From positions 39,256,437 to 39,320,436 of the forward strand of contig NC_090409.1 in the NCBI RefSeq assembly GCF_036365525.1: DNA of 64,000 nt, written 5' to 3'. The notes under the pieces were generated by a model that was not told where the DNA came from, searched no databases, and worked only from the letters and a program-made list of their open reading frames with translations. Shown one piece after another: positions 16 through 63,293 of the stretch; positions within the stretch are counted from its first letter, which is position 1; each line of letters opens with the position of its first letter. The stretch is from Heterodontus francisci (lineage: Eukaryota). Position numbers and translations under genes: made by a program.

Positions 16-348
16 GTTACCCGTCTGTCCCAGTTTCTGGGTTCCTTGGGGAGCAGGTTGTGCTGCCCTGTATCTACAAAGGGAATGTCCCAGTCTCTGA
101 ATTACAGGTAATTTGGTGGATATTCAATCGTGGAATTTTACACAAATTTATCGATGGGAACGATGATTTAACACAACAAGACCCATGGTTCAGAAACAGA
201 ACAAACCTGTTCAAAGATCAACTGGAACAAGACAACTGGTCAATTATGATCTCTGACCTCAGGCAGTCAGACCAGAATGAGTATCAGTGTGAGATTCAAC
301 AGAGGGAGACTCCAGTCTTTCATCAAGATATTCATCTCTTTGTAACAA
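16..348 (+). CDS. Copy A IgV exon (V-set, B7/BTN type)
   Basis: ttttccag|G acceptor, A|gtgag donor, 333 nt, phase 1-1. Contains [27 protein letters not shown] and DQNEYQC: the canonical V-set Cys/Trp/DxxxYxC pattern plus the B7/BTN-like RTxLF..L..xN.S motif. Confidence 0.92.
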
Positions 349-3300
349 GTGAGAGGTTTCTGTTTCAGGTATTCTGCATTTACTCTCCGATTTTATGGGT
401 ACGGTAGTGCAGTGGTTATGTTACTAGACTAGTAATCCAGAGGCCTGGTCTAATAATCCAGAGAATGTGAGTTCAAATCCCACCATGGCAATTTCAGAAT
501 TTAAATTCAGTTTAAAATAAATCTGGAAATATAAAGTTGGTCCCAATAAAAGTGACCATGAAGCTGTTGGATTGTTGTAAAACCCAACTGGTTCACTAAT
601 GTCCCTCGAGGGAAGGAAACCTGCCGTCCTTACCCGGTCTGGTCTATATGTGACTCCTGTCCCACATTAACCTGGTTGCCTTTTAACTGCCCTCTGAAGT
701 GGCCGAGCAGGTCAATCAGTTTGTATCAAACTACTGGAAAGAAAAACAAGTATAAAACTGAACGGACCACTGGCTGTGACCCAGGAATCGAATCAGGACA
801 CAGCAAAGGCAAACCCACGGTGCTATCAAGCTGCTCTCACTCTCCAGAAATGTGCTACATCTGTCTCCAGATGTTGGGGTGCAGGAAGTGGGGCCCATAG
901 CACCATTTTTCACTCTGCCGACCCTGTTCCTGATCCTTCCTGATCAGTTTTCCCGAGTCTCGTTCCTCCCATGATGTGTTTACCCACAGCCCTATAGAGT
1001 CTTTGAACATTTCTACAGTTTGTTTCACACACAATACTAAACACATGATGTTTTCTTTAGAGCGAGCTCGTACACCGGTACCGGACACACCTGTACCAGG
1101 TAAATCTGTTTCTAAACTACTGCATGTGCTTTTAGCTCTTGTGGTGTACAGTCAGGTGGGAGTGACCCCAGGAGTCCTCAGTATTAAGTCAATGAGGAGT
1201 AATATTGATACACGTATAAACCGTGTTCCACCCAATCCCATGGTTCTCCAAACCGACAAATTATTTTAAAATTCCCGCTCCATTTCAGCGAGCTGTTGGG
1301 CTTAATTGAAGGGAGGCTGTGTGGAAGTGAGCAGAAAGGCATGGCACAATGCTTAATGGGAAATATAGCCAAGTTAGGAATAGTAGCTTTGCTGAGCTTT
1401 GATTTTAAGTAGCAGAAACCACAATGAAATAGTTAAAAGTAAAGGCAGAGCGTGTGAGACTGTAAAGACTAGCCGACACTGGTAATTGCAAGGACATCTG
1501 TTCTTTATGGCCTGATTGTGTGACTCCCTGTGGTTTGGAACAAATGGACTCCTGTGAATCAAATGATGTCCATCCCTGTGTGAGTGATAAGGAGTGATAG
1601 GCCCCTCTTATCTTCGTGAGCTGCCACTACTTGATGTTTCTGCAGACTGAACGAAACACTCAGGAATGTAAACCTAATAGAGATAGCAGGATGCTCCGCA
1701 ATTACTTGTCACAAGGTAGAGACAGACTCATGATCCATGTAGGGAGTGAGACTAGAATGATTATTGATGATTCCTATGCTCTTGCTAATTAGCTTGCTTG
1801 TCCGCTTTCTTTTATCTTGCTGGTACAAAACAATATTTTATTAGTAACAAGTATGTATGGAGAATAGAGTGTATTGTAACCTCAGTAACAGATGTACTGC
1901 ATGTCACCACGTGGGTGAAGTCGAATTGTATCGCACTGATTGGTTAAACAAGGGGGTGTAGCATGAATCTTAATGTATAAACAGTAGTACCTGTATCAAA
2001 AAAACTTCACTTACTCTAGTGGACCAGACAGACTCTGGGTGGAGTCAGTGTCGTTGCATTAGAGTAAGTCAGCCGGCTAAATGCGCAAATAAAGTAATTG
2101 ATTTTCCCGACACATCCGACTCGGTATATTTACTGAACCAGACTGACGGCAAAAAGAACTCAGATTTACAGCTGCTGCTGGTCAGTGTCCAGTTATCTCC
2201 ATTGGAAAGCATGTATCGATCACATTGTGGGGGGATGTGTGTGTGTGAGATTATTGATATCTGACCTCCCACATCCCTCCAGGACTAGAATTGACCAGGG
2301 ATGTGTTTGTACTGGGGATGGTTCTGAAACACTAGGTGCTGACGGTCTCTGCTGTTAGTTTTGTTAGTGTGTCCCAGTCTGTTAACAGCTTCATTCTGTC
2401 TCTAGGTCCTGGACCCTCTACTGGATTGGTAGTTGGATTGGTCATCGCAATTCTTGTTCTTGTTTGCATAATTCTTGTTCTTGTTTGCATAATTCTGGGT
2501 TTTATTCTCGTAATCGGAAAGCAACAAAGATGGTGAGTTCTGGAATGTTCTGCAGTTCCCATTGTTAATTCTAGTTTTGTTTTATTCTATTTGGTGTTGT
2601 GGAAATGTTGTGTGCACTGATACACTTTGTGCTGTGTGGGATGTTTCAATGCTGCATTATCCAGTCACTTCCAGCTTGTTGTCATCCTCTAGCTGCTGAA
2701 CTGAAGGTGAAGAGCAGGAATGTGCGGCTCCCTCAATCACACAGTTAATAGACACTCGCCTAATCTCTGCAGCAAACAACTCACCAGCCTACACCTAAAA
2801 TCCCCTTGTCCCCTCTCCTCTGACTTTTCACCAGCCTCTGATCCTTGCTCTGTTCCCCAGCCACTGACTCCATCCCCCTCCCTGGCCACTGTCTGAGGCT
2901 GAACCAGACTGTTCACAACCTTGAAGTCCTATCAGACCCTGAGCTGAGCTTCCGACACTGTATCGTTTCCATCACTGAGATCTCCTACCTCTACTCCTGT
3001 GATATTCCCCTGTGTGATTTCAGTCCCTGTCTCTCCCCATCTGCTGCTGAAACTCCCGCCTCAGCCCATCTCCTGAAACCCTCATCCGTGCCTTTGTTAT
3101 TTTTGGACTCGACTATTCCAATGTTCCCCCGGCCAATTCCACCTTGCACCCTCCGTAAACTTGAGCTCATCTAAAATTCTGCTGCCCCGTATCCTAACTC
3201 ACACCAAGTCCCATTTACCCATCACTCCTGTTCTCACTGACCTAAATTCATCCTCCTGTTCAAATCCCTCCATTGCCTCACCTCTCCCGATCTCTAATCT

Positions 3301-4385
3301 CCTCCCTGATCTCTGTGCTGCTCCAATTCTGGCCTCTTGCACCCCCCTGTTTTCCATCACTCCACCATTGGCGGCTGTGCCTTTAGCTGCCTGAGCCCTA
3401 AGTTCTAGAATTCCATCCCTAAACCTCTCTGTCCCTCTCTGTCTCTCCTCCTTTCAGACACACCTGAAAACCTACGTCTATATCCGAGCTTTTGATCACC
3501 AGCCCTAATATCTTGGTGCACACATTCTGTTTGATAATTGCTCCTGTGAAGCATCTTGGGATGATAAAGGAGCTATATAAATGCATGTTGTTGTTTAAGC
3601 GCAAATAGAGATTGCATTTTTCAAGTCACCCCCTGTGACCCGGCCATCAGTGGTTTTAATCACTAACAAGGGTATGTTGCATTTCTCTGTCTCCCTCAAC
3701 ATCCACATCTCCCTGCCCACCTCTTGCCCACCTGCCAGTGGGGAGGGGGAACTATTGCAGACTCTCTAACTCTGTCCTCTGACTCTCCCCCATCACAATA
3801 TTTCTGTTTCCGTCAGCCTGTTTGGTCACTGCTGGGTCGGATTTGATCACATCAGGGAATATCCTGTCCATCTGTGTCTCCTCTCAATAATTCAGGATCA
3901 GTCTGGAGAGTACGGACATTCCCAGCCTCCTCCTGTCTGATCTGATCCCCATTATCTTCAGCTCAGTGTTAACCAAGATCCTCATCAATTCTTCTTAATC
4001 TCCAATGTTGAGGTGAGCTGTCATTTTTCTATTGGTCTGGTGCCTCGGTCAGCACAGGTCCTGTGGAGTGTCCAGCTCTTGCCCATTGCCTCCTCTATAA
4101 GCCTCCTCTCCTCTACACTCTGTGCTCCATCACCGTGCAGCTCCTGTGACCCATTTTCCAGCTGCCATTGGTGCCCAGGATGTTGAGTGTAATTTAATTG
4201 GTCTGTGCTCCTGAACAGCTCCTTTACACACTTGTACAAAGTGTTGGATTCTTTTAATGTAACCTGAACTCTGCTGTTTTTTCCCTCCCAGGACAGAGAA
4301 CAAACGCAGCATCAATCGCAATGAAGCATCTAATGTCGTCCCTTTGACAGGGGTGACTTGTTCAGATGAAACACGGGCTTTGTGA
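16..4385 (+). CDS. Copy A (5'-partial): single-IgV B7/butyrophilin/MOG-like type I membrane protein
   Basis: Exons 16-348 (IgV), 1061-1099 (stalk), 2406-2532 (TM), 4292-4385 (tail, stop TGA). All introns GT-AG with consistent phases (1,1,2). Leader exons would lie upstream of the window. Confidence 0.85.
397..820 (+). mobile_element. tRNA-headed SINE/LINE 5' region in the intron after the IgV exon (homologs at about 20670-21092 and 58690-62028 on -)
   Basis: A box TAGTGCAGTGG 405-415 and B box GAGTTCAAATCC 469-480; body similar to 46220-46600. Confidence 0.7.
1061..1099 (+). CDS. Copy A Pro/Thr stalk mini-exon ([13 protein letters not shown])
   Basis: ttttctttag acceptor, G|gtaaat donor, 39 nt in frame; homologous exons in B and C. 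Confidence 0.8.
1320..2170 (+). mobile_element. Solo LTR (851 bp), present only in copy A
   Basis: TGT...ACA termini and 4-bp TSD GCTG (1316-1319, 2171-2174). Empty site in B (about 19975) and C (about 55435). Internal reverse CCAAT about 1939, TATAAA 1976-1981, AATAAA 2088-2093. Confidence 0.8.
2406..2532 (+). CDS. Copy A transmembrane exon
   Basis: tctctag acceptor, TG|gtgagt donor; [42 protein letters not shown]. Confidence 0.85.
2840..3600 (+). mobile_element. L2-like LINE 3' remnant (homologs about 18770-19625 and 54600-54790 on -)
   Basis: Decayed RT C-terminal-like sequence (KLELI..SAARILT) ending in gctatataaatgcatgttgttgtt. Confidence 0.6.
4292..4385 (+). CDS. Copy A cytoplasmic tail exon, truncated by a 1-bp deletion relative to C
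   Basis: Polypyrimidine tract ending ctcccag; (W)[30 protein letters not shown]; phase matches the TM exon. Confidence 0.7.
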
Positions 4386-6785: not shown

Positions 6786-7405
6786 ACACCAAGTGAGCAG
6801 CATGGAGGCCAGCACGATGGCGTACTGCTGCGACAGAGTACTTCACTCGGACAATTTGGTGAGTGAGGGAATTCGGCGCAGGGAGGGAAGAGGTGCTGTT
6901 CTGGTCTTTCACAAGACAAGGAGTGATCTGAGAGTGGGAGCAGGAGACAGTGAGACCAGAGAGCTGAAGTCCAGAGGCATTAATTAGATAAACAGGTAAA
7001 TGATTAGTTAGGGAAGGAAAATCTGCCGTCCTTACCTGGTCTGGTCTACATGTAACTCCAGACCCACAGCAATGTGGTTAACTCTTAACTGCCCTCTGAA
7101 AAGGCCGAGCAAGTCATTCAGTTTTATCAAATAATTGGGGATTATAATCGAGGTGAGAAAGCCACAGCCATGAGGACATTCAATGTGTCTCAGATACTGA
7201 AACAAGGCCAACAGCAACTAAATGGAGTGATCAATGTGTCCTGGGTACTGAAGTAAACTCACTCACAACAATGAGGAAGATCTAGTTTATCCTGAAGTAT
7301 GGATTCCATTAAAAGTCGTGTGTCTTGAGGCCACACGGACAGTCAAACATGTTCCAAATCAGAGCAACATGAGGAGAGAGCCCCAACCAACAGTTCAATG
7401 TATCT
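6786..7405 (-). pseudogene. Two relic exons of an unidentified gene (about 7405-7263 and 6927-6786)
   Basis: Splice-site-like borders (ctcccactctcag, gtgagt, gtaagt); the joined frame is interrupted only by three TGA codons. Homologs at about 11895-12040 and 49118-49740. Confidence 0.3.
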
Positions 7406-17654: not shown

Positions 17655-17715
17655 TCAAAGGACATCATTCGATGCTGCATTTTGATTGATGCTGTATCGA
17701 TTTTGAACACAATTC
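17655..17715 (-). CDS. Copy B cytoplasmic tail exon, short because of a frameshift
   Basis: (W)[19 protein letters not shown]; one C missing relative to A and C (gtcctttga vs gtccctttga). Confidence 0.7.
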
Positions 17716-20700
17716 CTGGGAGAGAAAAAAACAGCAGAGTTCAGGTTACATTAAAAGAATCCAACACTTTGTACAAGTGTGTAAAGGAGCTGTTCAGGAA
17801 CACAGACCGATTAAATTACACTCAACATCCTGGGCACCAATGGCAGCTGGAAAATGGGTCACAGGAGCTGCACAGTGATGGAGCACAGAGTGTAGAGGAG
17901 AGGAGGCTTATAGAGGAGGCAATGGGCAAGAGCTGGACACTCCACAGGACCTGTGCTGACCGAGGCACCAGACCAATAGAAAAATGACAGCTCACCTCAA
18001 CATTGGAGATTAAGAAGAATTGATGAGGATCTCGGTTAACACTGAGCTGAAGATGATGGGGATCAGATCAGACAGGAGGAGGCTGGGAATGTCCGTACTC
18101 TCCAGACTGATCCTGAATTATAGAGAGGAGTCACAGATGGACAGGATATTCCCTGATGTTAAGTTCAGTTCAGTTCAGTGATACAGCACTGAAACAGGCC
18201 CTTCGGCCCACCGAGTCTGTGCCGACCATCAACCACCCATTTATACTAATCCTACAGTAATTCCATATTCCTACCACATCCCCACCTGTCCCTATATTTC
18301 CCTACCGCCTACCTATACTCGGGGCAATTACTAATGGCCAATTTACCTATCAACCTGCAAGTCTTTGGCATGTGGGAGGAAACCGGAGCACCCGGAGGAA
18401 ACCCACGCAGACACAGGGAGAACATGCAAACTCCACACAGGCAGTACCCGGAATTAAACCAGGGTCGCTAGAGCTGTGAGGCTGCGGTGCTAACCACTGC
18501 GCCACTGTGCCGCCCCTGTGATCAAACCCGACCCAGCAGTGACCAAACAGGCTGACGGAGGCAGAAATATCGAAATGGGCGAGAGTCAGTGATCAGAGTT
18601 AGAGAGTCTGCAATAGTTCCCCCTCCCCACTGGCAGGTGGGTAAGAGGTGGGCAGGGAGATGTGGATGTTGAGGGAGACAGAGAAATGCAGCATATCCTT
18701 GTTAGTGATCAAAACCACAGATGGCCGGGTCACAGGGGGTGGTTTGAAAAATGTAACCACAAATAGAGATTGAACAACAACATGCATTTATATAGCTCCT
18801 TTATCATCCCAAGGTGCTTCACAGGAGCAATTATCAAACAGAATGTGTGCACTGAGATATTAGGGCTGGTGATGTAGGTTTTCAGGCGGGTCTGAAAGGA
18901 GGAGGGACAGAGAGGGACAGAGAGGTTTATTGATGGAATTCTAGAACCCAGGACTCAGGCAGCTAAAGGCACAGCCGCCAATGGTGGAGTGATGGAAATC
19001 AGGGGGGGTGCACAAGAGGCCAGAATTGGAGCAGCACAGAGATCAGGGAGGACATTAGAGATAGGGAGGGGTGAGGCAATGGAGGGATTTGAACAGGAGG
19101 ATGAATGTAGGTCAGTGAGAACAGGGGTGATAGGGGCACGGCTGCTCCCTATCCACCCTAAGTTGAAGGGTCAGTTACGAGGGGTCACAAGTTTAAGGTG
19201 AGGGGCAGGAGGTTTAAGGGGGATTTGAGGAAGAACTTTTTTTTACCCAGAGGGTGGTGACGGTCTGGAATGCTCTGCCTGGGAGGGTGGTAGACACATG
19301 TTGCCTCACATCCTTTAAAAAGTACCTGGATGAGCACGTCATAACATTCAAGGCTATGGGCCAAGTGCTGACAAATGGGATTAGGTAGACAGGTCAGGTG
19401 TTTTAATGCATCGGTACAGACTCGATGGGCCGAAGGGCCTCTTCTGCACTGTTTTATTCTGTGATTTAGTGATGGGTAAATGGGACTTGGTGTGAGTTAG
19501 GATACGGGGCAGCAGAATTTTAGATGAGCTCAAGTTTATGGAGAGTGTCAGGTGGAATTGGCCGGGGGAACATTGGAATAGTCGAGTCCAGAGATAACAA
19601 AGGCACGGATGAGGGTTTCATGAAATGCAACATTGAAACATCCCACACAGCACAAAGTGTATCAGTGTACACAACATTTCCACAACACCAAATATAATAA
19701 AACAAAACTAGAAATAACAATGGGAACTGCAGAACATTCCAGAACTCACCATCTTTGTTTCTTTCGAATAATGAAAAGGACAATTACAGCAATGAGAAGA
19801 AGAAGAATTGCGATGACCAATCCAACTACTGCTCCAGTAGAGAGTCCAGGATCTAGAGACAGAATGAAGCTGTTAACAGACTGGGACACACTAACAAAAC
19901 TAACAGAGAACTTCAGAATGTCACACAGATACAGTCACCGATACATGCTTTCCAAACGAGATAACTGGACACTGCCCAGCAGCCTCCCTTCAATTAAACC
20001 CAACATCCCGCTGAAATAGGAGCGGAAATTTTAAAATAATTTGCCGGTTGGGAAATCCACGGGATTGGGTGGAACGTGGTTTATACACAGATCAATATTA
20101 CTCCTCATTGACTTCATACTGAGGACTCCCGGGGTCACCCCCACCTGACTGTGTACGAGAGCTAAAAACACATGCAGTAGTTTAGAAACTGATTTACCTG
20201 GTACAGGTGTGTCCGGTACAGGTGTGTCCGGTACAGGTGTACGAGCTCGCTCTGAAGAAAACATCATGTGTTCAGTATTGTGTGTGAAACAAACTGCAGA
20301 AATATTCAAAGACTCTATCGGGCTGTAGGGAAACACATCCCGGGAGGAACGAGACTCGGGTCAAACTGATCAGGAAGGATCAGGAACAGGGTCGGCAGAG
20401 TGAAAAATCCAACAGGATTGCATTCACTTTGAGGGGGAGAATGGAAGTTTTCCCAGAGTTACCCCCAGCAGGATCATTCCCAGCAGACTACACCCACCTG
20501 TGGAGAGAATTCCCACAGGAACCTGGGCCGACTGGGATACACTTTCAAGGTAAGTGCACTGGGTCCTGTAAAGGCTGCCTGAGAGGTGCTATGGGCCCCA
20601 CCTCCTGCACCCCAACATCTGGAGACAGATGTAGCACGTTTCTGGAGAGTGAGAGCAGCTTGATAGCACCGTGGGTTTGCCTTTGCTGTGTCCTGATTCG

Positions 20701-23700: not shown

Positions 23701-25988
23701 TCCTCAACCCGATACGGCCAGACTTTGCCCCCTCCCTGGACCCAAAACCCAATCCTCAGTCCTGATGACCCTACTCCCCATGCTCAGAGGCAATTCCCAG
23801 TTCTATTCCAGACTCCTGATCCCAGTGCTCAGGACCCCATCCCAGTACCACTGGATCCCAGTCACCCATCCCAGTGTTACCGAGTGTTACTCAGTGTCCA
23901 CATTCCACTGTTCACATCACAGGGATTATTCTGAAGACATTAAGAGCAGTGGATGTGGTGTATATGGATTTTAGCAAGGCGTTTGATAAGGTTCCCCATG
24001 GTAGGCTCATTCAGAAAGTAAGGAGGCATGGGATACAGGGAAAGTTGGCTGCATGGATACAAAATTGGCTGGCCCATGGAAGACAGAGGGTGGTAGTAGA
24101 TGGAAAGTATTCAACATGGAGCTCGGTGACCAGTGGTGTTCCGCAGGGATCTGTTCTGGGACCTCTGCTCTTTGTGATTTTTATAAATGACTTGGGTGAG
24201 GAAGTTGAAGGCTGGGTTAGCAAGTTTGCCGATGACACGAAGGTTGCTGGAGTTGTGGATAGTGTGGAAGGCTGTTGTAGGTTGCAACGGGACATTGACA
24301 GGATGCAGAGCTGGGCTGAGAAGTGGCAGATGGAGTTCAACCTGGAAAAGTGTGAAGTGATTCATTTTGGAAGGTCGAATTTGAATACAGAATACAGGCT
24401 TAAAGACAGGATTCTTGGCAGTGTGGAGGAACAGAGGGATCTTGGGGTCCATGTCCATAGATCGCTCAAAGTTGCCACCCAAGTTGATAGGGTTGTTAAG
24501 AAGGCGTATGGTGTGTTGGCTTTCATTAACAAGGGGATTGAGTTTAAGAGCCGTGAGGTTATGCTGCAGCTCTATAAGGCCCTGGTTCGACCACACTTGG
24601 AATATTGTGTTCAGTTCTGGTCGCCTCATTATAGGAAGGATGTGGAAGCTTTATTGAGGGTGCAGAGGAGATTTACCAGGATGCTGCCTGGACTGGAGGG
24701 CATGTCTTACGAAGAAAGATTGAGGGAGCTCAGGCTTTTCTCATTGGAGCGAAGATGGATGAGAGGTGACTTGATAGAGGGGTACAAGATGATGAGAGGC
24801 ATAGATAGAGTGGATAGCCAGAGACTTTTTCCCAGGGTGGAAAGGGCTATTACCAGGGGGCATAATTTTAAGGTGATTGGAGGAAGGTTTCGGGGAGATG
24901 TCAGAGGTAGGTTCTTTACACAGAGAGTGGTGGGTGCGTGGAATGCGTTGCCAGTGGTGGTAGTAGAAGCGGATACATTAGGGACATTTAAGCAACTCTT
25001 GGATAGGTACATGGATGACAGCAGAATGAAGGGTAGGTAGTTAGTTTGATCTTCGAGTAGGTTAAAGGTTCGGCACAACATCGTGGGCCGAAGGGCCTGT
25101 ACTGTGCGATGTTCTATTAACTGCCTTCCTTTCAGGTCTCATGATCATTATGTGTAATGTGAACCGACTGTGTCCACTCCCTCAATGGGCCCACTCACAG
25201 TGAACACAGCACCTTAAAGCAAAATGAATTCCTGATATAATGAAGACTATTCCCCAGTAATATACACATTACTGATTTCAGTCCCAGACACCCAGACAAA
25301 TGTTCTTTCCAGGAGATAGCTAACTGCAGTCTGCATAAATTCACAAGGTTAACACCATCCAGGAAGATAAATCCTGATATAATCCATGTCACCAGCAGCC
25401 CCGAGCTCTGCTGAAATGTGAGAGCAGTCACAGCGTTTACCTGAAACAGCAGCAACAGCATTTAGCAGCAGCAGCAGGAGGAGGGGTTTCTGTAAGTTGG
25501 GTCCCTGCAACAAAAAAACACAGTTACCCCCCTTTACCACAGTTTCTTGCTGCTCATGTCCATTTCTGAGCCGGGACAGGACACAGTCCATGGTCCCGCT
25601 CCCCATTACTGACCCTCCTCCCTCCCGGCTCTGAGACACATTGAGACCGGGAGCAGCCCTGACACAGTCCATGGTCCCACTCCCCATTACTGACCCCCCT
25701 CCCCCCGGCTCTGAGACACATTGAGACCGGGAACAGCCCTGACACAGTCCATGGTCCCTCTCCCCATTACTGACCTCCCTCCCTCCCGGCTCTGAGACAC
25801 ATTTAGACCGGGAGCAGCCCTGACACAGTCCATGGTCCCGCTCCCCATTACTGACCCCCCTCCCTCCCACCCGGCTCTGAGACACATTGAGACCGGGAGC
25901 AGCCCTGACACAGCCCATGGTCCCTCTCCCCATTACTGACCGCCTGGGTGTGAGACACTGACAGTACCTGCAGTGCTTTTCCATCCAT
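17655..25988 (-). CDS. Copy B: complete single-IgV B7/BTN-like membrane protein, about 211 aa
   Basis: Exons 25988-25968 (MDGKALQ), 25504-25441 ([21 protein letters not shown]), 21473-21141 (IgV), 20251-20198 (stalk), 19852-19750 (TM), 17715-17655 (tail). All GT-AG, phases 0,1,1,1,2; 636 nt in total. Confidence 0.85.
18160..18516 (-). mobile_element. Full-length tRNA-derived V-SINE (HE1-like), present only in copy B
   Basis: Head ggggcggcacagtggcgcagtggttagc, V-SINE core gtgggtttcctccgggtgctccggtttcctcccaca, CR1-type tail with (tgaac)n, TSD tgt; empty site in A and C. Confidence 0.9.
19140..19466 (+). mobile_element. CR1 3' fragment inside the L2 remnant of copy B
   Basis: RGHKFKV-like and QRVV..WNALP coding remnant plus gggccgaagggcc tail. 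Confidence 0.75.
19750..19852 (-). CDS. Copy B transmembrane exon
   Basis: [34 protein letters not shown]; tctag acceptor, gtgagt donor. Confidence 0.85.
20198..20251 (-). CDS. Copy B stalk exon ([18 protein letters not shown])
   Basis: 54 nt; ttcttcag acceptor, gtaaat donor. Confidence 0.8.
21141..21473 (-). CDS. Copy B IgV exon
   Basis: 333 nt, phase 1-1; [22 protein letters not shown] and DQNEYRC. Confidence 0.92.
22010..23600 (-). mobile_element. Older CR1 LINE, RT region and 3' end, decayed
   Basis: Fragmented ORFs: [35 protein letters not shown]. Confidence 0.9.
23945..25117 (+). mobile_element. 5'-truncated CR1 LINE with an open RT frame
   Basis: ORF 23874-25040 from [14 protein letters not shown] to the C-terminus; CR1 3' tail. 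Confidence 0.95.
25441..25504 (-). CDS. Copy B signal-peptide exon
   Basis: ttgcag acceptor, G|gtaaac donor, poly-Leu core ending AVAAVS; identical layout at 62861-62924. Confidence 0.85.
25565..25945. repeat. Minisatellite of about 80-bp unit (about 4.7 units) in intron 1 of copy B
   Basis: ccggctctgagacacattgagaccggg...ccccattactgacc recurs at 25625, 25705, 25786 and 25871. Confidence 0.9.
25968..25988 (-). CDS. Copy B first coding exon (MDGKALQ)
   Basis: ATG GAT GGA AAA GCA CTG CAG|gtactg; phase 0 fits the leader exon; conserved at 63273-63293 and 33501-33521. Confidence 0.65.
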
Positions 25989-33480: not shown

Positions 33481-33500
33481 GTGTGAGACACTGACAATAC

Positions 33501-33521
33501 CTGCAACACTTTTCCATCCAT
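33501..33521 (-). other. Orphan duplicate of exon 1 (MDGKVLQ)
   Basis: ATG GAT GGA AAA GTG TTG CAG|gtattg, with flanks homologous to 25945-26045; no intact leader or IgV exon of its own. Confidence 0.65.
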
Positions 33522-38100: not shown

Positions 38101-40576
38101 AGTTCATTTGCGATAGTCAGCACGGTTTTGTGAAAGGTAGGTCGTGCCTCACAAACCTTATTGAGTTTTTCGAGAAGGTGACCAAACAGGTGGATGAGGG
38201 TAAAGCCGTGGATGTGGTGTATATGGATTTCAGTAAGGCGTTTGATAAGGTTCCCCACGGTAGGCTATTGCAGAAAATACGGAAGTATGGGGTTGAAGGT
38301 GATTTAGAGCTTTGGATCAGAAATTGCCGAGCTGAAAGAAGACAGAGGGTGGTGGTTGATGGCAAATGTTCATCCTGGAGTTTAGTTACTAGTGGTGTAC
38401 TGCAAGGTTCTGTTTTGGGGCCATTGCTGTTTGTCATTTTTATAAATGACCTGGATGAGGGTGTAGAAGGGTGGGTTAGTAAATTTGCGGATGACACGAA
38501 GGTCGGTGGAGTTGTGGATAGTGTCGAAGGGTGTTGTAGGGTACAGAGGGACATAGATAGGCTGCAGAGCTGGGCTGAGAGATGGCAAATGGAGTTTAAT
38601 GCGGAGAAGTGTGAGGTGATTCACTTTGGAAGGAGTAACAGCAATGCAGAGTACTGGGCTAATGGGAAGATTCTTGGTAGTGTAGATGAGTAGAGAGATC
38701 TTGGAGTCCAGCTACATAAATCCCTGAAAGTTGCTACCCAGGTTAATAGGGCTGTTAAGAAGGCATATGGTGTGTTAGCTTTTATTAGTAGGGGGATCGA
38801 GTTTCGGAGCCACGAGGTCATGATGCAGCTGTACAAAACTCTGGTGAGGCCGCACCTTGAGTATTGCATGCAGTTCTGGTCACCGCATTATAGGAAGGAT
38901 GTGGAAGCTTTGGAAAGGGTGCAGAGGAGATTTACTAGGATGTTGCCTGGTATGGAGGGAAGGTCTTACGAGGAAAGGCTGAGGGACTTGGGGTTGTTTT
39001 CGTTAGAGAGAAGGAGGAGGAGAGGTGACTTAATAGAGACATACAAGATAATCAGAGGGTTAGATAGGGTGGATAGTGAGAGTCTTTTTCCTCGGATGAT
39101 GATGGCAAACACGAGGGGACATAGCTATAAGTTGAGGGGTGAAAGATATAGGACAGATGTCAGAGGTAGTTTCTTTACGCAGAGAGTAGTAGGGGCGTGG
39201 AATGCCCTGCCTGCAACAGTAGTAGACTCGCCAACTTTAAGGGCATTTAAGTGGTCATTGGATAGACATATGGATGAAAATGGAATAGTGTAGGTCAGAT
39301 GGTTTCACAGGTCGGCGCAACATCGAGGGCCGAAGGGCCTGTACTGCACTGTAATGTTCTAATTCTAAAAAACAGGTGTGAGGAACCCGGTAACAGGTGA
39401 GGAACCCGGTAAAAGGTGTGAGGAACCCGGTAACAGGTGAGGAACCCATTAACAGGTGAGGAACCCGGTAACAGGTGTGAGGAACCCGGTGACAGGTGAG
39501 GAACCCAGTAACAGGTGTGTGGAACCCGGTAACAGGTGTGTGGAACCCGGTAACAGGTGTGAGGAACCCGGTGACAGGTGAGGAACCCGGTAACAGGTGA
39601 GGAACCCATTAACAGATGAGGAACCCGTTAACAGGTGAGGAACCCGGTAACAGGTGAGGAACCCGGTAATAGGTGTGAGGAACCCGGTAACAGGTGTGAG
39701 GAACCCGGTGACAGGTGAGGAACCCAGTAACAGGTGTGAGGAACCCATTAACAGATGAGGAACCCGTTAACAGGTGAGGAACCCGGTAACAGGTGAGGAA
39801 CCCGGTAACAGGTGTGAGGAACCCGGTAACAGGTGTGAGGAACTGGTCACAGGTGAGGAACCCAGTAACAGGTGTGAGGAACCCGTTAACAGATGAGGAA
39901 CCCGTTAACAGGTGTGGAACCCGGTAACAGGTGTGAGGAACTGGTCACAGGTGAGGAACCCAGTAACAGGTGTGAGGAACCCGTTAACAGATGAGGAACC
40001 CGTTAACAGGTGAGGAACCCGGTAACAGGTGAGGAACCCGTTAACAGGTGAGGAACCCGGTAACAGGTGAGGAACCCGGTAACAGGTGAGGAACCCGGTA
40101 ACAGGTGTTAGGAACCCGGTAACAGGTGTGAGGAACCCGGTGACAGGTGAGGAACCCAGTAACAGGTGTGAGGAACCCATTAACAGGTGAGGAACCCGGT
40201 AACAGGTGAGGAACCCATTAACAGATGAGGAACCCGTTAACAGGTGAGGAACCCGGTAACAGGTGAGGAACCCGGTAACAGGTGTGAGGAACCCGGTAAC
40301 AGGTGTGAGGAACCCGGTAACAGGTGTGAGGAACCCGGTAACAGGTGTTAGGAACCCGGTAACAGGTGTGAGGAACCCGGTGACAGGTGAGGAACCCAGT
40401 AACAGGTGTGAGGAACCCATTAACAGGTGAGGAACCCGGTAACAGGTGAGGAACCCATTAACAGATGAGGAACCCGTTAACAGGTGAGGAACCCGGTAAC
40501 AGGTGAGGAACCCGGTAACAGGTGTGAGGAACCCGGTAACAGGTGTGAGGAACTGGTCACAGGTGAGGAACCCAGC
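35140..40576. repeat. 19-bp satellite GGTAACAGGTGAGGAACCC (with 20/21-bp variants), roughly 200 units, split by a CR1
   Basis: Period 19 read directly (cccggt at 35161, 35180, 35199); arrays at 35140-37794 and 39372-40576. Confidence 0.97.
37795..39371 (+). mobile_element. 5'-truncated CR1 LINE inserted in the 19-bp satellite
   Basis: RT ORFs 37785-38693 and 38772-39293 separated by one in-frame TAG; tail tgttctaattctaa. Confidence 0.95.
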
Positions 40577-53752: not shown

Positions 53753-53927
53753 TTAGTGCTGGACAGCCCCGTTCCCCAGAAGGTTTTGTTCTCCAGCTGC
53801 TCCATTCTGATGCTCAGGTGCTGTTGTGAAACATGGGACCTTGTGACCTGAACAAGTCACCCCTGTCAAAGGGACGACATTAGATGCTTCATTTTGATTG
53901 ATGCTGTGATGATTTTGAACACAATTC
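53753..53927 (-). CDS. Copy C cytoplasmic tail exon
   Basis: (W)[57 protein letters not shown]. Confidence 0.72.
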
Positions 53928-56900
53928 CTGGGAGAGAAAAACAGCAGAGTTCAGGTTACATTAAAAGAATCCAACACTTTGTACAAGTGTGTAAAGGAGC
54001 TGTTCAGGAGCACAGACCGATTAAATTACACTCAACATCCTGGGCACCAATGGCAGCTGGAAAATGGGTCACAGGAGCTGCACGGTGATGGAGCACAGAG
54101 TGTAGAGGAGAGGAGGCTTATAGAGGAGGCAATGGGCAAGAGCTGGACACTCCATGGGACCTGTGCTGACCGAGGCACCAGACCAATAGAAAAATGACAA
54201 CTCACCTCAACATTGGAGATTAAGAAGAATTGATGAAGATCTCGGTTAACACTGAACTGAAGATGATGGGGATCAGATCAGACAGGAGGAGGCTGGTAAT
54301 GTCCGTACTCTCCAGTCTGATCCTGTATTATTGAAAGGAGCCACAGATGGACAGGATATTCCCGGATGTGATCAAACCCGACCCAGCAGTGACCAAACAG
54401 GCTGACGGAGACAGAAATATTGGGATGGGGGAAAAGAGTCAGAGGACAGAGTTAGAGAATCTGCAATAGTTTCCCCCCCACAACTGGCAGATAGGTAAGA
54501 GATGGGCAGGGAGATGTGGATGTTGAGGGAGGCAGAGAAATGCAACATATTTTATTGTTAGTGATCAAAACCACTGATGGTCAGGTCAAGGGATGAGAGT
54601 GGACACAGGGTATATCACAGAAGCGGAGGTAGGTGGTATTGGAGTGATGGGAGAGAATATGGAGTCAGAAGCTCAGCTCAGGGTCTGATAGGACTCCGAG
54701 GTTGTGAACAGTCTGGTTCAGCCTCAGACAGTGGCCAGGGAGGGGGATGGAGTCAGTGACTGGGGAACAGAGCAAGGATCAGAGGCTGATGAAAAGTCAG
54801 AGGAGAGGGGACAAGGGGATTTTAGGTGTAGGCTGGTGAGTTGTTTGCTGCAGAGATTAGACGAGTGTCTATTAACTGTGTGATAGAGGGAGCCGCACAT
54901 TCCTGCTCTTCACCTTCAGTTCAGCAGCTAGAGGATGACAACAAGCTGGAAGTGACTGGATAATGCAGAATTGAAACATCCCACACAGCACAAAGTGTAT
55001 CAGTGCACACAACATTTCCACAACACCAAATATAATAAAACAAAACTAGAATTAACAATGGGAACTGCAGAACATTCCAGAACTCACCATCTTTGTCGCT
55101 TTAGGAAAACCAGAATTATGCAAAGAAGAACAAGAATTATGCAAATAAGAACAAGAATTGCGATGACCAATCCAACTACTGCTCCAGTAGAGGGTCCAGG
55201 AGCTAAAGACAGAATGAAGCCGTTAACAGACTGGGACACACTAACAAAACTAACAGCAGAGACTGTCAGCACCTAGTGTTTCAGAACCATCCCCAGTACA
55301 AACACATCCCTGGTCAATTCTAGTCCTGGAGGAATGCGGGAGACTAAATATTAATAATCTCACACACACACACACTGCCCCACAGTCTGATAGATACATG
55401 CTTTCCAATGGAGATAACTGGACACTGACCAGCAGCAGCTTCCCTTCAATTAAACCCAACAGCTCGCTGAAATAGAGCAGGAATTTTAAACTCGTGAAAA
55501 TCACAGGATTGGATGGATGCTGGTTTACATCCAGCTCCTGGAGTTCCCGGAAAGATGGGAAAAGATTTGGAAGGTGACAACACATTAAAGGATTTGGGAG
55601 GGGAAAGGGAGGTAGGAGATGGGACAGTAGTTTCCGAAGGTTAAGGGTTATTTTTTTGAGGATAGCGATGATCTCGCCAGATTTACAGGAGAGGCAGATA
55701 ACACCTGGAGACAAGCATTTACAATATCGACTAACATTACAACCAAGAGGGAAAGGTGGGTGTTCGGTAGTTTAGCAGGAACAGGATCAAGGGAACAGGA
55801 GGTGGGTCTCATGGACATGATGAGCTCAAACAGGGAATGAGTGGAAATAGGAGAGAAACCAGAGAAAGATGGGAGTTCAGGGTTAGGGCAGGATTATAGG
55901 AAGTTTGGCCAGGTGTGCTAGTGGAAGGGAGGGACACGACAGAGGCAGCTTTTCGAATGGTCTCGAACTTAGTGACAGAACAGTCCATGAGCTCCTCGCA
56001 CGTATTGTTGGACTTATTACCCATTCAGTGTGAGCATATGTAAAATCTAAAAACACATGCAGTAGTTTAGAAACAGATTTACCTGGTACAGGTGTGTTCA
56101 ATACAGGTGTGTTCAGTACAGGTGTACGAGTTCGCTCTAAAGAAAACATCATGTGTTTAGCATTGTGTGTGACGGTAGACAGGCAATTGCTCACACCTGA
56201 AGATCTAATACATAGTTTACAACAAAAATGCATTTCTTTAATGTAAAAAATCCCAGCAAGGAAAGTGTTCCAACCGTGGCTAACAAAAGAAATCAAAGAT
56301 TGTATTAGAGCAAAGGAAGAGGCGTATAAAGTTGCCAAAAACATGTTAATCCTGAGGATTGGGAACATTTCAAAATTCTGCAAAGGAGGACCGGGAAAAA
56401 GATTAAGAAAGGGAAATAGAATAGGAGAGTAAATTAGCGAGAAACATAAAAACAGACTGTAAAAGCTTCTCCAGATCTGTAAAACAGAAAAGATTAGTAA
56501 AGACAAATGTGGGTCCATTACAAACAGACTTAGGAGAATTTATAATTGGGAACAAGGAAATGGCAGAGAAAATAAAACAAATACTTTGTGTCTGTCTTCA
56601 CAGAGGAAAATACTAAAAAGCTCCCAGAAATAATGGAGAATCAAGGGACTAGTGTCAACAAGGAACTGCAAGATACCAATATTAATAAACAAGTACAAGA
56701 GAAATTAGTGGGACTGAAAGTAGATAAATCCTCTGGACCTGATGATCTACATCCCAGCATGTTGAAAGAGGTGGCTGTAGAGATAGTTGATGCATTAGTG
56801 GTCATCTTTCAAAATTCTGTAGACTCTGGAATGGTTCCCGCAGACTGGAAGGTGGTAAATGTAACCCAACTGTTTAAGAAAGGAGGGAGAGAGAAAACAG

Positions 56901-59900: not shown

Positions 59901-62900
59901 GCCACTGTGCGTTGGTGGTGGAGGGAGTGAATGTTTGTAGATGGGGTGCCAATCAAGCGGGCTGCTTTGTCCTGGATGGTGTCGAGCTTCTTGAGTGTTG
60001 TTGGAGCTGCACCCATCCAGGCAAGTGGAGAGTATTCCATCACACTCCTGACTTGTGCCTTGTAGATGGTGGACAGGCTTTGGGGAGTCAGGAGGTGAGT
60101 TACTCGCCTCAGGATTCCAAGCCTCTGACCTGCTCTTGTAGCCATGGTATTTATATGGCTACTCCAGTTCAGTTTCTGGTCAATGGTAGCCCCTAGGATG
60201 TTGATAGTGGGGGATTCAGCGATGGTAATGCCGTTGAATGTCAAGGGGAGATGGTTAGATTCTCTCTTGTTGGAGATGGTGATTGCCTGGCACTTGTGTG
60301 GTGCGAATGTTACTTGCCACTTAACAGCCCAAGCCTGGATATTGTCCAGGTCTTGCTGCATTTCTACACGGACTGCTTCAGTATCTGAGGAGTCACGAAT
60401 GGTGCTGAACATTGTGCAATCACCAGCGAACATCCCCACTTCTGAACTTATGATTGAAAGAAGGTCATTGATGAAGCAGCTGAAGATGGTTGGGCCTCGG
60501 ACACTACCCTGAGGAATTAGAATTAGAACATTACAGCGCAGTGCAGGCCCTTCGGCCCTCGATGTTGCGCCGATCTGTGAAACCATCTGACCTACACTAT
60601 TCCATTTTCATCCATATGTCTATCCAATGACCACTTAAATGCCCTTAAAGTTGGCGAGTCTACTACTGTTGCAGGCAGGGCGTTCCACCCCCCTACTACT
60701 CTCTGAGTAAAGAAACTAACTCTGACATCTGTCCTATATCTATCACCCCTTAACTTAAAGCTATGTCCCCTCGTGTTTGCCATCACCATCCGAGGAAAAA
60801 GACTCTCACTATCCAACCTATCTAACCCTCTGATTATCTTATATGTCTCTATTAAGTCACCTCTCCTCCTCCTTCTCTCCAATGAAAACAACCTCAAGTC
60901 CCTCAGCCTTCCCTCCATACCAGGCAACATCCTAGTAAATCTCCTCTGCACCCTTTCCATAGCTTCCACATCCTTCCTATAATGCAGTGACCAGAACTGC
61001 ACGCAATACTCCAGGTGCGGTCTCACCAGAGTTTTGTACACCTGCAGCATGACCTCGTGGCTCCGAAACTCGATCCCCCTACTAATAAAAGCTAACACAC
61101 CATATGCCTTCTTAACAGCCCTATTAACCTGGGTAGCAACCTTCAGGGAATTATGCACCTGGACACCAAGATCTCTCTGTTCATCTACGCTACCAAGAAT
61201 CTTCCCATTAGCCCAGTACTCTGCATTGCTGTTACTCCTTCCAAAGTGAATCACCTCACACTTTTCCGCATTAAACTCCATTTGCCATCTCTCAGCCCAG
61301 CTCTGCAGCCTATCTATGTCCCTCTGTACCCTACAACATCCTTTGGCACTATCCACAACTCCACCGACCTTAGTGTCATCCGCAAATTTACTAACCCACC
61401 CTTCTACACCCTCTTCCAGGTCATTTATAAAAATGACAAACAGCAGTGGCCCCAAAACAGATCCTTGCGGTAGACCACTCGTAACTAAACTCCAGGATGA
61501 ACATTTGCCATCAACCACCACCCTCTGTCTTCTTTCAGCTAGCCAATTTCTGATCCAAAGCTCTAAATCACCTTCAACCCCATACTTCCGTATTTTCTGC
61601 AATAGCCTACCATGGGGAACCTTATCAAACGCCTTACTGAAATCCATATACACCACATCCACGTCTTTACCCTCATCCACCTGTTTGGTCACCTTCTCGA
61701 AAAACTCAATAAGGTTTGTGAGGCACGACCTACCCGTCACAAAACCGTGCTGACTATCGCTAATGAGGAACTCCTGCAGTGATGTCCTGGAGCTCAGATG
61801 ATTGACCTCCAACAACCACAACCATCTTCCTTTGTGCTAGGTATGACTTCAGCCAGCGGAGGGTTTTCCCCGATTCCCATCGACCTCAGTTTTGCGAGGG
61901 CTCCTTGATGCCATATTCGGTCAAATGCTGCCTTGATGTCAACGGCAGTCACTCTCACCTCACCTCTGGATTACTAGTCCAGGCCTCTGGATTACTAGTC
62001 TAGTAACATAACCACTGCACTACCGTACCAATAAAATCAGAGTAAATGCAGAATACCTGAAACAGAAACTTCTCACCTGTTACAGAGAGATCAACATCTT
62101 GATGAAAGACAACATCTGCCCTCTTGTAAAACTGGCACACATACTTGTACTGGTCTGACTGCCTGAGGTCAGAGATCATAACTGACCAGTTGCCTTGTTC
62201 CAGTTGATCTTTGAACAGGTTTGTTCTGTTTCTGAACCGTGGGTCTTGTAGTGCCAACTCATCATTTCCATTGGCAAATCTGTGTAAAACTCCACGCTTG
62301 AATATCCACCAAATTACCTGGAAATCAGAGACCGGGACATTCTCTTTGTAGACACAGGGCAGCACAACATGCTCCCCAAGGAACCCAGAAACTGGGACAG
62401 ACGAGTAACCTGGAAAAGATTGAAAGTATTTATCCACAGATATAACCTCCCTGCTGGTACATTCCATCCCAAGCTTCACATGGTTACACTGCGATGCTTG
62501 ATTTACAAGAAGCACTGATCAGTAACTCACTGCTTTCATTTCTGTGGGAAGGTTAAAGGTCAGGCATTAAGGGCCTTCAACTAAAACCAGCTTGTGCTGG
62601 ATATTTGTATCCACAGAGCAGCTGGACAGCACTTTGAATCGTGTGTTTCCCATTGTACACATGCTGGGAGAACACATCAGGATATTGGTCACCCTGCCCA
62701 CCTCCCCCCTTTGGGAGAACAATGACAGACCAGTGAACTGGCAGTGAGATCCCCAAACAAACACTGGATTTGGGACTGAGGTTTACAGAATCACCCAGGC
62801 TTCAACACTGAACCAACTAATCCGAGCTCTGCTGAACGTGAGAGCAGTCACAGCGCTTACCTGAAACAGCAGCAACAGCATTTAGCAGCAGCAGGAGGAG

Positions 62901-63293
62901 GAGGAGTTTCTGTAAGTTGGGTCCCTGCAACAAGAAAACACAGTTACCCCCCTTTACCACAGTTTCTTGCTGCTCATGTCCATTTCTGAACCGGACTGTG
63001 TCACTGTGTCCCCCACCCCTGGGTGTAGATTAACAGCTAGGTGTTTATTTTCAGTTTAAACACAGTTTCTCTCGCTCCATCTCCTGTCTGACATTTCTCC
63101 TTTTATAAATGAGACCCTGCCCCAGGGTCAGGAAGACAAAGCCCCGAAATAGAACAAACTCTTCCCCTTTTTAGAGGGAGACAAACAATAAAGAGGCGAA
63201 TCCTCGGGGAGAGAAAGGAAAGTTTCCCCCACATCCCCCTCCCTCTCCCCGGGTGTGAGACACTGACAATACCTGCAGCGCTTTTCCATCCAT
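53753..63293 (-). CDS. Copy C: complete single-IgV B7/BTN-like membrane protein, about 253 aa, full-length tail
   Basis: Exons 63293-63273, 62924-62861, 62409-62077, 56136-56083, 55202-55088 and 53927-53753 (TAA). All GT-AG, phases 0,1,1,1,2; 762 nt in total. AATAAA on - at 53356-53366. Confidence 0.87.
55088..55202 (-). CDS. Copy C transmembrane exon
   Basis: [38 protein letters not shown]. Confidence 0.85.
56083..56136 (-). CDS. Copy C stalk exon (ERTRTPVLNTPVLNTPVP)
   Basis: 54 nt; ttttctttag acceptor, gtaaat donor. Confidence 0.8.
56173..58281 (+). mobile_element. Decayed CR1 LINE present only in copy C, about 36 nt from the stalk-exon acceptor
   Basis: DKSSGPDDLHP, NYRPVSL and RGDLIQTYKI motifs with CR1 tail; empty site in B at about 20287. 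Confidence 0.9.
59531..61963 (-). mobile_element. Family-2 LINE with 10-bp TSD, carrying a nested CR1
   Basis: TSD CTCTGGATTA at 59521-59530 and 61964-61973; T tract at 59531; RT ORF 59825-60510. Confidence 0.9.
60517..61763 (-). mobile_element. Nested CR1 with 7-bp TSD
   Basis: TSD TGAGGAA at 60510-60516 and 61764-61770; open RT frame, very similar to 38110-39371. Confidence 0.93.
62077..62409 (-). CDS. Copy C IgV exon
   Basis: 333 nt, phase 1-1; [22 protein letters not shown] and DQYKYVC. Confidence 0.92.
62861..62924 (-). CDS. Copy C signal-peptide exon ([21 protein letters not shown])
   Basis: ttgcag acceptor, G|gtaagc donor. Confidence 0.85.
63273..63293 (-). CDS. Copy C first coding exon (MDGKALQ)
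   Basis: ATG GAT GGA AAA GCG CTG CAG|gtattg. Confidence 0.65.

What the first reader, a model, noticed from the sequence alone, without database searches (positions are those of the whole stretch)
16..63293. Clustered, diversifying family of single-IgV B7/butyrophilin-like surface proteins in a shark-like genome
Seen: three paralogs share a six-exon plan (MDGKALQ mini-exon, poly-Leu leader, one IgV, Pro/Thr stalk mini-exon, TM, tail) with no IgC exon, no B30.2 domain, no ITIM/ITAM and no charged TM residue. Known: the Q...RTxLF...L..GN.S signature is typical of B7-family and butyrophilin V domains; B7 ligands normally also have a C domain, while single-V relatives (MOG, chicken BG) are fewer. 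Inference: a lineage-specific, birth-and-death immune ligand or receptor cluster in which V-domain surface, stalk, TM and tail all vary between copies. This is the best candidate for an undescribed system here.
Basis: partly seen in the sequence, partly recalled or inferred. Interest (0 to 1): 0.8.

Follow-up and report, generated by a model that had tools for sequence, protein, structure and literature searches.

The report
Shark single-V B7-like gene cluster
This stretch of horn shark DNA holds three recently duplicated genes of a shark-only family of small surface proteins, each with one antibody-like domain resembling the immune checkpoint ligands B7-H4, B7-H3 and PD-L1; databases already predict the family, but I found no study of it.

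Summary
The window is Heterodontus francisci (horn shark). It holds three paralogous genes: g1 on the + strand at 16-4385, g2 on the - strand at 33521/25988-17655, and g3 on the - strand at 63293-53753.

All three follow one plan: start mini-exon, poly-Leu leader, one IgV exon, Pro/Thr stalk mini-exon, TM exon, tail exon. There is no IgC exon, no B30.2 domain, no ITIM/ITAM and no charged TM residue. My exon translations match RefSeq models.

- **Domain type:** the V domain is B7-type. Its best solved relatives are B7-H4, B7-H3 and PD-L1, and the predicted fold has TM 0.88 to B7-H4 IgV.
- **Distribution:** the family is multi-copy in 12 shark species. I found it in no ray, chimaera or bony vertebrate. 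A family-specific cytoplasmic tail marks it.
- **Horn shark copies:** their V domains form one clade.
- **Divergence:** V exons are islands of divergence (12.6% against about 2% in flanking introns). The changes sit in two patches on the C-C' and F-G strands. Synonymous sites are raised too and dN/dS is about 1. This fits segmental exchange or retention of old V lineages; positive selection is not shown.
- **Decay:** two of the three genes (g1, g2) have frameshift-truncated tails.

Function is inferred.

The scan has already reported this same cluster on neighbouring DNA (s1-871838, s1-874320 and others). I found no paper describing it.

The parts
16..348 (+). g1 IgV exon (phase 1-1, 333 nt)
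   Evidence: Pfam V-set; AG/GT borders; translation identical to the V domain of RefSeq P0004. Carries G72D at a Gly that is otherwise invariant in the family.
1061..1099 (+). g1 stalk mini-exon ([12 protein letters not shown], 39 nt, phase 1-1)
   Evidence: matches P0004
2406..2532 (+). g1 TM exon (127 nt, phase 1-2; contains a 7-residue internal duplication)
4292..4385 (+). g1 tail coding part. A 1-nt deletion gives a stop after ...SDETRAL. The ancestral tail end is still readable out of frame up to about 4456.
33501..33521 (-). Distal extra copy of exon 1 (MDGKVLQ, GT donor). RefSeq model P0003 of g2 uses this copy.
25968..25988 (-). g2 proximal exon 1 (MDGKALQ)
25441..25504 (-). g2 leader exon 2 ([21 protein letters not shown])
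   Evidence: matches P0003
21141..21473 (-). g2 IgV exon
   Evidence: (100% identical to P0003)
20198..20251 (-). g2 stalk mini-exon (54 nt; has one more 15-nt TPVPD unit than g1)
19750..19852 (-). g2 TM exon (103 nt)
17655..17715 (-). g2 tail coding part. A 1-nt deletion gives a stop after ...SNDVL. The ancestral tail is still readable out of frame down to 17545.
63273..63293 (-). g3 exon 1 (MDGKALQ); a TATA-like GTATAAC lies about 85 nt upstream
62861..62924 (-). g3 leader exon 2
62077..62409 (-). g3 IgV exon (V sub-lineage B; divergent patches at exon nt 112-159 and 261-299)
56083..56136 (-). g3 stalk mini-exon (RTRTPVLNTPVLNTPVP)
   Evidence: matches P0012
55088..55202 (-). g3 TM exon (115 nt)
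53753..53927 (-). g3 tail exon coding part. Full-length 57-residue family tail ending ...TTAPEHQNGAAGEQNLLGNGAVQH, then the stop.

Best explanation
**What is shown**
- The window holds three tandem or inverted paralogs of a shark-specific multigene family within the B7/butyrophilin superfamily.
- Each gene encodes a small (about 210-255 aa) type I membrane glycoprotein built from a signal peptide, one B7-type IgV domain, a short Pro/Thr stalk with a variable number of 5-residue units, one TM helix and a tyrosine-motif-free cytoplasmic tail.
- g3 is intact. g1 and g2 each have an independent 1-nt deletion that truncates the conserved tail.
- The copies arose by recent duplication and then diverged through LINE/SINE insertion, stalk-repeat and TM-repeat changes, and patchy replacement of V-exon segments.
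- The variable residues lie on the C-C' and F-G strands, which belong to one sheet of the domain.

**What is inferred**
- The proteins act as cell-surface ligands or co-signalling partners. Skipping the TM exon, as in RefSeq isoforms, would give soluble forms.
- A receptor on shark lymphocytes or NK-like cells probably reads their GFCC' face. That is the face B7 ligands use, and the logic resembles butyrophilin-like, Skint or chicken BG molecules.
- The conserved tail probably serves sorting or adaptor binding, not ITIM/ITAM signalling.
- Diversity among copies is made mainly by short-tract gene conversion or recombination between cluster members, together with gene birth and death.
For: - **Gene anatomy and paralogy:**
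- **Match to RefSeq horn shark proteins:**
- **V-set and B7 type:** Pfam. PDB phmmer gives B7-H4 V 5.9e-14, CD276 1e-17 summed over two V domains, PD-L1 1e-10, plus MOG and BTN1A1. The AlphaFold model has pLDDT 95.4. Foldseek's top hit is B7-H4 IgV 4gos at TM 0.88, then PD-L1.
- **No IgC:**. A canonical horn shark CD276-like protein on another scaffold does have a C2-set domain.
- **Family limits:** the word search gave 72 hits, all from sharks. The exhaustive HMMER search, rescored per domain, gave 195 bits or more for members and 86 or less for the next relatives. Those are teleost or sturgeon BTNL2/CD276/VTCN1-like proteins and the horn shark's own CD276-like protein.
- **Tail motifs:** found only in shark proteins.
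- **V tree:** the family is one clade (SH-aLRT 91), the horn shark copies are one clade (93), and g3 falls in a separate sub-lineage (99).
- **Islands of divergence:** g2 against g3 shows 42/333 differences in the exon and 9/434 in the flanking intron (Fisher 5e-9). Synonymous sites show 10/71 (p 5e-5). Nineteen or twenty differences fall in one 39-nt window (permutation p <= 5e-5).
- **Variable positions:** they map to C-C' and F-G.
- **Module reassortment among horn shark paralogs:**
- **Soluble isoform:** the TM-skipped frame of the g3 tail exon reproduces the C-terminus of P0012.
Against:
- The RefSeq models are predictions.
- dN/dS near 1 is also what relaxed constraint gives. g1 carries G72D at an invariant Gly, and g1 and g2 have truncated tails, so some copies may be dying.
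- No receptor, cell type or tissue is known.
- The ligand-versus-receptor call rests on analogy alone.
Confidence: 0.72

Rival explanations
1. The copies in this window are mostly decaying duplicates (nascent pseudogenes) of a family whose working members lie elsewhere in the cluster. Their V-exon differences are neutral drift.
For: - dN/dS is 0.86-1.16.
- g1 and g2 have frameshift-truncated tails.
- g1 has G72D at an invariant Gly.
- The loci are riddled with LINE/SINE insertions.
Against: - All three V exons are open over 333 nt and have intact splice sites.
- Exon divergence is 3-7 times intron divergence and falls in two patches. Drift does not produce that.
- g2's V domain departs at no conserved position, and g3 is fully intact.
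- RefSeq models all three as coding.
Confidence: 0.15
2. The proteins are receptors, not ligands. They would be germline-encoded variable recognition receptors, like NITR, CD300/TREM or NKp30, whose variable C-C' and F-G face binds pathogen or self ligands.
For: - A single V domain with hypervariability in the loop region equivalent to CDR3 (F-G), including length variation.
- A multigene cluster with rapid turnover.
Against: - No charged TM residue to recruit an ITAM adaptor, and no ITIM/ITAM/ITSM in the tail.
- No J-like G-strand motif.
- The sequence and fold neighbours are B7 ligands, not receptor V domains.
Confidence: 0.13

Closest known systems
B7-H4 (VTCN1), B7-H3 (CD276) and PD-L1 IgV domains
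   Same: - B7-type V sequence signature: FRNRT.LF.DQL..GN.S followed by D...Y.C, with two conserved N-glycosylation sequons.
- Same fold: TM 0.88 to 4gos, and 24-28% identity in the fold alignments.
- Type I membrane protein with phase-1 Ig exon borders.
   Different: - No membrane-proximal IgC domain.
- A family-specific 57-residue tail.
- A tandem multigene family confined to sharks, not single conserved orthologues.
- Horn shark has a separate canonical V-V-C CD276-like gene on another scaffold.
Chicken BG genes (B7/butyrophilin superfamily, MHC-linked multigene family)
   Same: - One extracellular IgV plus TM, with no IgC and no B30.2.
- A tandem cluster with copy turnover, and hybrids formed between the extracellular and intracellular parts (PMC8813856; module table).
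   Different: - BG tails are very long heptad-repeat coiled coils, and BG chains are disulphide-linked dimers.
- The shark tail is short with no heptads, and the ectodomain has only the two canonical Ig cysteines.
- The two are not closest relatives by sequence.
MOG (myelin-oligodendrocyte glycoprotein)
   Same: A single IgV of the BTN/B7 type. PDB phmmer hits reach 1e-9, and RefSeq names several members 'MOG-like'.
   Different: By established knowledge, MOG is a conserved single-copy gene with a second hydrophobic segment. The shark family is multi-copy and clusters by shark order, with one TM and a different tail.
Teleost and sturgeon multi-V 'BTNL2-like / CD276-like / VTCN1-like' proteins
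   Same: These are the nearest non-shark relatives by profile score, at 60-86 bits per V domain. They are also clustered multigene families.
   Different: They usually carry 2-11 V-type stretches per predicted protein, have unrelated tails, and lack the shark tail motif. They form the outgroup clade in the V tree.

Membership tests
B7 family (CD80/CD86, PD-L1/L2, B7-H3, B7-H4 and others) | N-terminal IgV domain with B7-type sequence and fold | tested here: met
B7 family (CD80/CD86, PD-L1/L2, B7-H3, B7-H4 and others) | Membrane-proximal IgC (C1/C2-set) domain | tested here: not met
   No IgC exon between the V and TM exons or anywhere else in the window. All family proteins carry only PF07686-type hits.
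B7 family (CD80/CD86, PD-L1/L2, B7-H3, B7-H4 and others) | Type I membrane protein with a short tail; Ig exons bounded by phase-1 introns | tested here: met
B7 family (CD80/CD86, PD-L1/L2, B7-H3, B7-H4 and others) | Location in the MHC or an MHC paralogous region | not tested
   The only lead is an unchecked scan note (s1-872335) that places the class III marker VWA7 1.64 Mb away on the same piece.
B7 family (CD80/CD86, PD-L1/L2, B7-H3, B7-H4 and others) | Binds a CD28-family or other lymphocyte receptor | not testable with these tools
   Needs binding assays.
Butyrophilins (BTN/BTNL) | IgV-IgC ectodomain plus an intracellular B30.2 (PRY-SPRY) domain | tested here: not met
   No IgC. The tail is 57 residues or fewer, with no Pfam domain.
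Chicken BG | Single IgV plus TM without IgC | tested here: met
Chicken BG | Very long heptad-repeat (coiled-coil) cytoplasmic tail; disulphide-linked dimers | tested here: not met
   The tail is 20-57 residues without heptads, and there is no unpaired ectodomain Cys. BG features are taken from PMC8813856.
MOG | Conserved single-copy orthologue with a second hydrophobic segment after the TM | tested here: not met
   Multi-copy, with clades that follow shark orders. One hydrophobic segment only.
Shark single-V B7-like family (RefSeq-predicted, unnamed) | V domain scoring far above all other IgV domains against the family profile (members 195 bits or more, others 86 or less) | tested here: met
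   The V domains of g1, g2 and g3 are identical to those of P0004, P0003 and P0012.
Shark single-V B7-like family (RefSeq-predicted, unnamed) | Family-specific tail ...PLTGVTC...TTAPEHQ.GAAGEQNLLGNGAVQH | tested here: met
   Intact in g3. In g1 and g2 the motif is present in the DNA but put out of frame by 1-nt deletions.

The most novel reading that the evidence does not exclude
The cluster may be the shark counterpart of the butyrophilin-like, Skint and BG systems. It would be an MHC-linked array of a dozen or more germline-encoded single-V B7-like ligands. Gene conversion between cluster members would keep their GFCC' recognition face diverse. Gamma-delta T cells, NAR-TCR cells or NK-like cells would read that face. 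Soluble and tail-less variants would act as modulators. The same leader-stalk-TM-tail cassette would also display a non-Ig, Cys-rich ectodomain.
Probability: 0.2. Interest if true: 0.8.

Novelty: new variant of a known kind. Interest (0 to 1): 0.5.

Why it matters
Sharks are the oldest living lineage with antibody, TCR and MHC-based immunity, and their co-signalling ligands are barely charted.

This is a shark-only, rapidly turning-over family of V-only B7-like proteins. It has a variable recognition face and a conserved private tail. That shows the B7/butyrophilin superfamily independently produced 'minimal' single-V multigene clusters at least twice: chicken BG and this family.

It also gives concrete candidates for ligands of shark gamma-delta or innate-like lymphocytes.

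On a practical level, the RefSeq names for these genes are misleading and should be unified. They include MOG-like, VTCN1-like, CD276 homolog, ICOS ligand-like, CD86-like and sodium channel beta-4-like.

Tried and rejected
- **RNA evidence.** No read evidence could therefore be obtained.
- **DNA of other cluster members.** I could not fetch the DNA, scaffold positions or flanking genes of other members, so the MHC linkage and full-cluster gene-conversion tests were not done.
- **Joined models.** Exons were translated and searched singly, and then compared with database proteins that the searches returned.
- **Scans that gave nothing useful.** The NCBIfam scan found nothing, as expected for a bacterial and archaeal library. 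The atlas search with the tail gave no usable look-alike.
- **Literature.** Six searches and five papers read produced no description of this family. Flajnik et al. 2012 (PMC3709836) is not held.
- **Rejected: assembly or haplotype duplication.** The copies differ in TE content and in their TM and stalk exons.
- **Rejected: a hidden IgC exon**.
- **Rejected: a fourth gene at 33.5 kb.** Only an exon-1 copy is there.
- **Not shown: simple positive selection.** dS is raised as well.
- **Out of range.** The search of earlier findings does not accept coordinates beyond the window.
Full report
**What is there**

ORF listing and direct reading show three V-set Ig exons: 16-348 (+), 21473-21141 (-) and 62409-62077 (-). 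Pfam PF07686 E-values are 8e-9 to 2e-13.

Each V exon is followed on its own strand by three more exons:
- a 39-54 nt Pro/Thr 'stalk' exon made of 15-nt units (TPVPD or TPVLN, one to two extra copies);
- a TM exon of 103-127 nt;
- a tail exon.

All borders are AG/GT, and the phases are 1-1 (V), 1-1 (stalk) and 1-2 (TM). g2 and g3 also have, inside the window, a 21-nt first exon (MDGKALQ) and a 64-nt poly-Leu leader exon. The first two exons of g1 lie left of the window.

A self-comparison shows the three loci are 88-96% identical, introns included. They differ by LINE and SINE insertions. For example, the V-stalk intron is 0.7-0.9 kb in g1 and g2 but 5.9 kb in g3, and intron 2 is 0.45 kb in g3 but 4 kb in g2. 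They are real paralogs and not assembly duplicates. g1 and g2 lie tail to tail.

tblastn with family proteins and with canonical V-C B7-like proteins finds no further V exon and no IgC exon in the window. One extra copy of exon 1 (MDGKVLQ, with a GT donor) lies at 33521-33501.

**Identity of the genome and gene models**

I searched with the V exon alone, inside its natural open reading frame.

That search returned horn shark (Heterodontus francisci) RefSeq proteins from one 44.09-Mb scaffold. My single-exon translations equal the following:
- P0003 (211 aa, 'VTCN1-like X1') for g2;
- P0004 (222 aa, 'MOG-like X6') for g1;
- P0012 (182 aa) for the V and stalk of g3.

P0003 uses the distal exon 1 at 33521, not the proximal one.

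P0012 lacks the TM exon. Reading the g3 tail exon in the frame that TM skipping produces gives exactly its C-terminus (GIVFKIITASIKMKHLMSSL). The exon phases therefore predict a soluble isoform.

These are predicted models. I could not obtain read evidence:
- The look-up of sequencing runs gave no run on record as RNA;

**What kind of V domain**

Against solved structures, the best single-domain match is the human B7-H4 IgV (5.9e-14). CD276/B7-H3, PD-L1, MOG, JAML and BTN1A1 follow. The shared motif runs from FRNRTNLF through DQLEQGNWS to the D...Y.C of strand F.

An AlphaFold model built on a 35-sequence alignment has mean pLDDT 95.4. Its nearest solved folds are B7-H4 IgV (4gos, TM 0.88) and PD-L1 IgV.

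The horn shark also has a canonical CD276-like gene on another scaffold with V-V-C2 domains. The absence of IgC here is therefore a property of this family, not of shark B7s in general.

**The family and its limits**

A profile of 28 members found 72 proteins by word search, all from sharks. The genera are Heterodontus, Carcharodon, Cetorhinus, Rhincodon, Chiloscyllium (two species), Hemiscyllium, Stegostoma, Scyliorhinus (two species), Mustelus and Pristiophorus. The RefSeq names are a dozen unrelated ones.

The claim 'shark-only' rests on the absence of relatives, so I ran the exhaustive HMMER search. It returned 4594 hits at E <= 1e-3, which is simply the size of the IgV world. Rescoring per domain showed a clean gap:
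- every protein at 195 bits or more is a shark family member;
- the next V domains score 86 bits or less;
- those belong to teleost or sturgeon 'BTNL2-like / CD276-like / VTCN1' proteins, often with many V stretches, and to the horn shark's own CD276-like protein.

No ray, skate or chimaera protein appeared.

The tail (...PLTGVTC...TTAPEHQ.GAAGEQNLLGNGAVQH) is strongly conserved across sharks and occurs in no non-shark hit. It has no Pfam match and no atlas look-alike.

A maximum-likelihood tree of 81 V domains gives the following:
- the family forms one clade against the outgroup (SH-aLRT 91);
- all 12 distinct horn shark V domains form one clade (93), and Pristiophorus forms another (98);
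- orectolobiform and lamniform species share several sub-lineages.

This is birth-and-death turnover, or concerted evolution, at the level of shark orders. No one-to-one orthology to a characterised gene exists.

**How the three copies differ**

*V exons.* Between g2 and g3 the V exon differs at 42 of 333 sites, while 434 nt of flanking intron differ at 9 (Fisher p 5e-9). Synonymous sites are also raised (10 of 71, p 5e-5), and dN/dS is 0.86-1.16.

The differences are not spread evenly. Thirteen fall in exon nt 112-159 (C-C') and 19-20 fall in nt 261-299 (F-G). That is half of all sites in the second patch (permutation p <= 5e-5), and it includes multi-hit codons and a silent change.

Recent point mutation under positive selection cannot produce this. 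It fits either short-tract replacement from a divergent paralog, or old V lineages kept while the introns were homogenised. This pattern is well known in MHC and other immune multigene families.

In agreement, g3's V belongs to a sub-lineage shared with three other horn shark genes (SH-aLRT 99), while g1 and g2 belong to another. Across horn shark paralogs, F-G types, TM types and tail sub-types occur in most combinations.

Across the whole family, variability peaks at V positions 34-40 and 87-104. The D-E region with the B7 signature is nearly invariant. In the model, strands C (29-35), C' (39-45), F (87-95) and G (98-109) form one sheet. From established structures of B7 complexes, this is the receptor-binding face of B7 ligands.

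*Tails.* g3 encodes the full 57-residue tail. g1 and g2 each have a different 1-nt deletion that stops translation early (...SDETRAL and ...SNDVL). The rest of the ancestral tail is still readable out of frame at 100% identity, so the lesions are recent. The g2 deletion shortens a C run and could in principle be an assembly error. The g1 lesion is more complex.

g1 also has Asp at an otherwise invariant Gly of the GNWS motif.

**Most likely mechanism**

Shown: a real, compact, recently duplicated set of genes for V-only B7-like type I membrane proteins. They have a conserved framework, a variable C-C'/F-G face and a private conserved tail.

Inferred:
- They are surface ligands or co-signalling partners, and soluble ones when the TM exon is skipped. 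A receptor on lymphoid or NK-like cells would read them, in the manner of butyrophilin-like, Skint or chicken BG molecules.
- The tail, which lacks Tyr motifs but carries an ExxLL-type dileucine and two conserved Cys, probably serves sorting or adaptor binding.

I put about 0.9 on the identity and evolutionary description, and about 0.35 on the ligand mechanism.

Two rivals remain:
- The copies here are mostly decaying duplicates. I rate this 0.15. The intact V exons and the patchy excess of exon divergence argue against it.
- The proteins are receptors, not ligands. I rate this 0.13. The neutral TM, the motif-free tail and the B7-ligand-like fold argue against it.

**Comparison with what is known**

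The family is a member of the B7/butyrophilin superfamily by its V domain. It fails the IgC criterion of canonical B7s and the IgC plus B30.2 criteria of butyrophilins.

The closest architectural analogue is chicken BG. BG has a single V and TM, sits in a tandem cluster, and forms recombinant hybrids of its outer and inner parts (PMC8813856). However, BG has a long coiled-coil tail and forms disulphide-linked dimers, and neither feature is present here.

'MOG-like' is a naming accident.

I found no paper describing the family. Flajnik et al. 2012 on B7 evolution is not held.

**Relation to earlier scan notes**

The scan has already reported this same cluster on neighbouring DNA:
- s1-871838 (+124 kb, followed up);
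- s1-874320 (+258 kb, followed up);
- s1-873607, s1-873621, s1-872428 and s1-872947;
- s1-874071, which overlaps the left edge of this window.

My own tests agree with their main points: shark-only, predicted in RefSeq under many names, and V exons as islands of divergence. Note s1-872335 places the MHC class III marker VWA7 1.64 Mb away on the same piece. I could not test this linkage.

**Verdict**

This is a new variant of a known kind, and it is already present in databases as unnamed predictions. Interest is 0.5.

Noticed in passing
not in the window; proteins P0069, P0071, P0143, P0177, P0070 (other sharks): Some shark proteins carry this family's leader, stalk, TM and conserved tail, but a Cys-rich non-Ig ectodomain with no Pfam match. 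The ectodomain appears to have been swapped on the same phase-1 exon scaffold. No such exon exists in this window.
   Followed up: partly
window 33501-33521 (-): An extra copy of exon 1 (MDGKVLQ) lies 7.5 kb upstream of g2's own exon 1. RefSeq model P0003 uses it. Its similarity to the other two promoters stops about 70 nt upstream, and it lacks their TATA-like GTATAAC. It is either an alternative promoter or a relic of a lost gene.
   Followed up: partly
window 35138-37793 and 39378-40573: A 19-bp satellite (about 138 and 60 copies) with strong GC skew, split by a LINE reverse-transcriptase insertion at about 37785-39293. It creates long spurious ORFs on the - strand.
   Followed up: no
window 25580-25941, 33237-33478, 63408-64000: Minisatellites sit next to each exon 1. 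An 81-bp unit lies in intron 1 of g2 and after the distal exon-1 copy. A 40-bp unit (14.5 or more copies, running off the window) lies upstream of g3.
   Followed up: no
window about 7313-7405 (+), 11989-11897 (-), 49212-49120 (-): A dispersed repeat with an ORF containing MYLRKG. It matches the alternative first exon of RefSeq family models P0006 and P0011 and the N-terminus of P0071. It may be a repeat-derived alternative first exon or promoter.
   Followed up: no
proteins P0047 (horn shark), P0001, P0002, P0049-P0054: RefSeq models with two family-type V domains (V-stalk-V-TM). P0007, P0009, P0011 and P0047 share an identical TM and tail behind different V exons. This is either exon duplication, or read-through with shared downstream exons. 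It cannot be resolved without the DNA.
   Followed up: partly
I did not analyse it further and sent it to no search tool afterwards.
   Followed up: no
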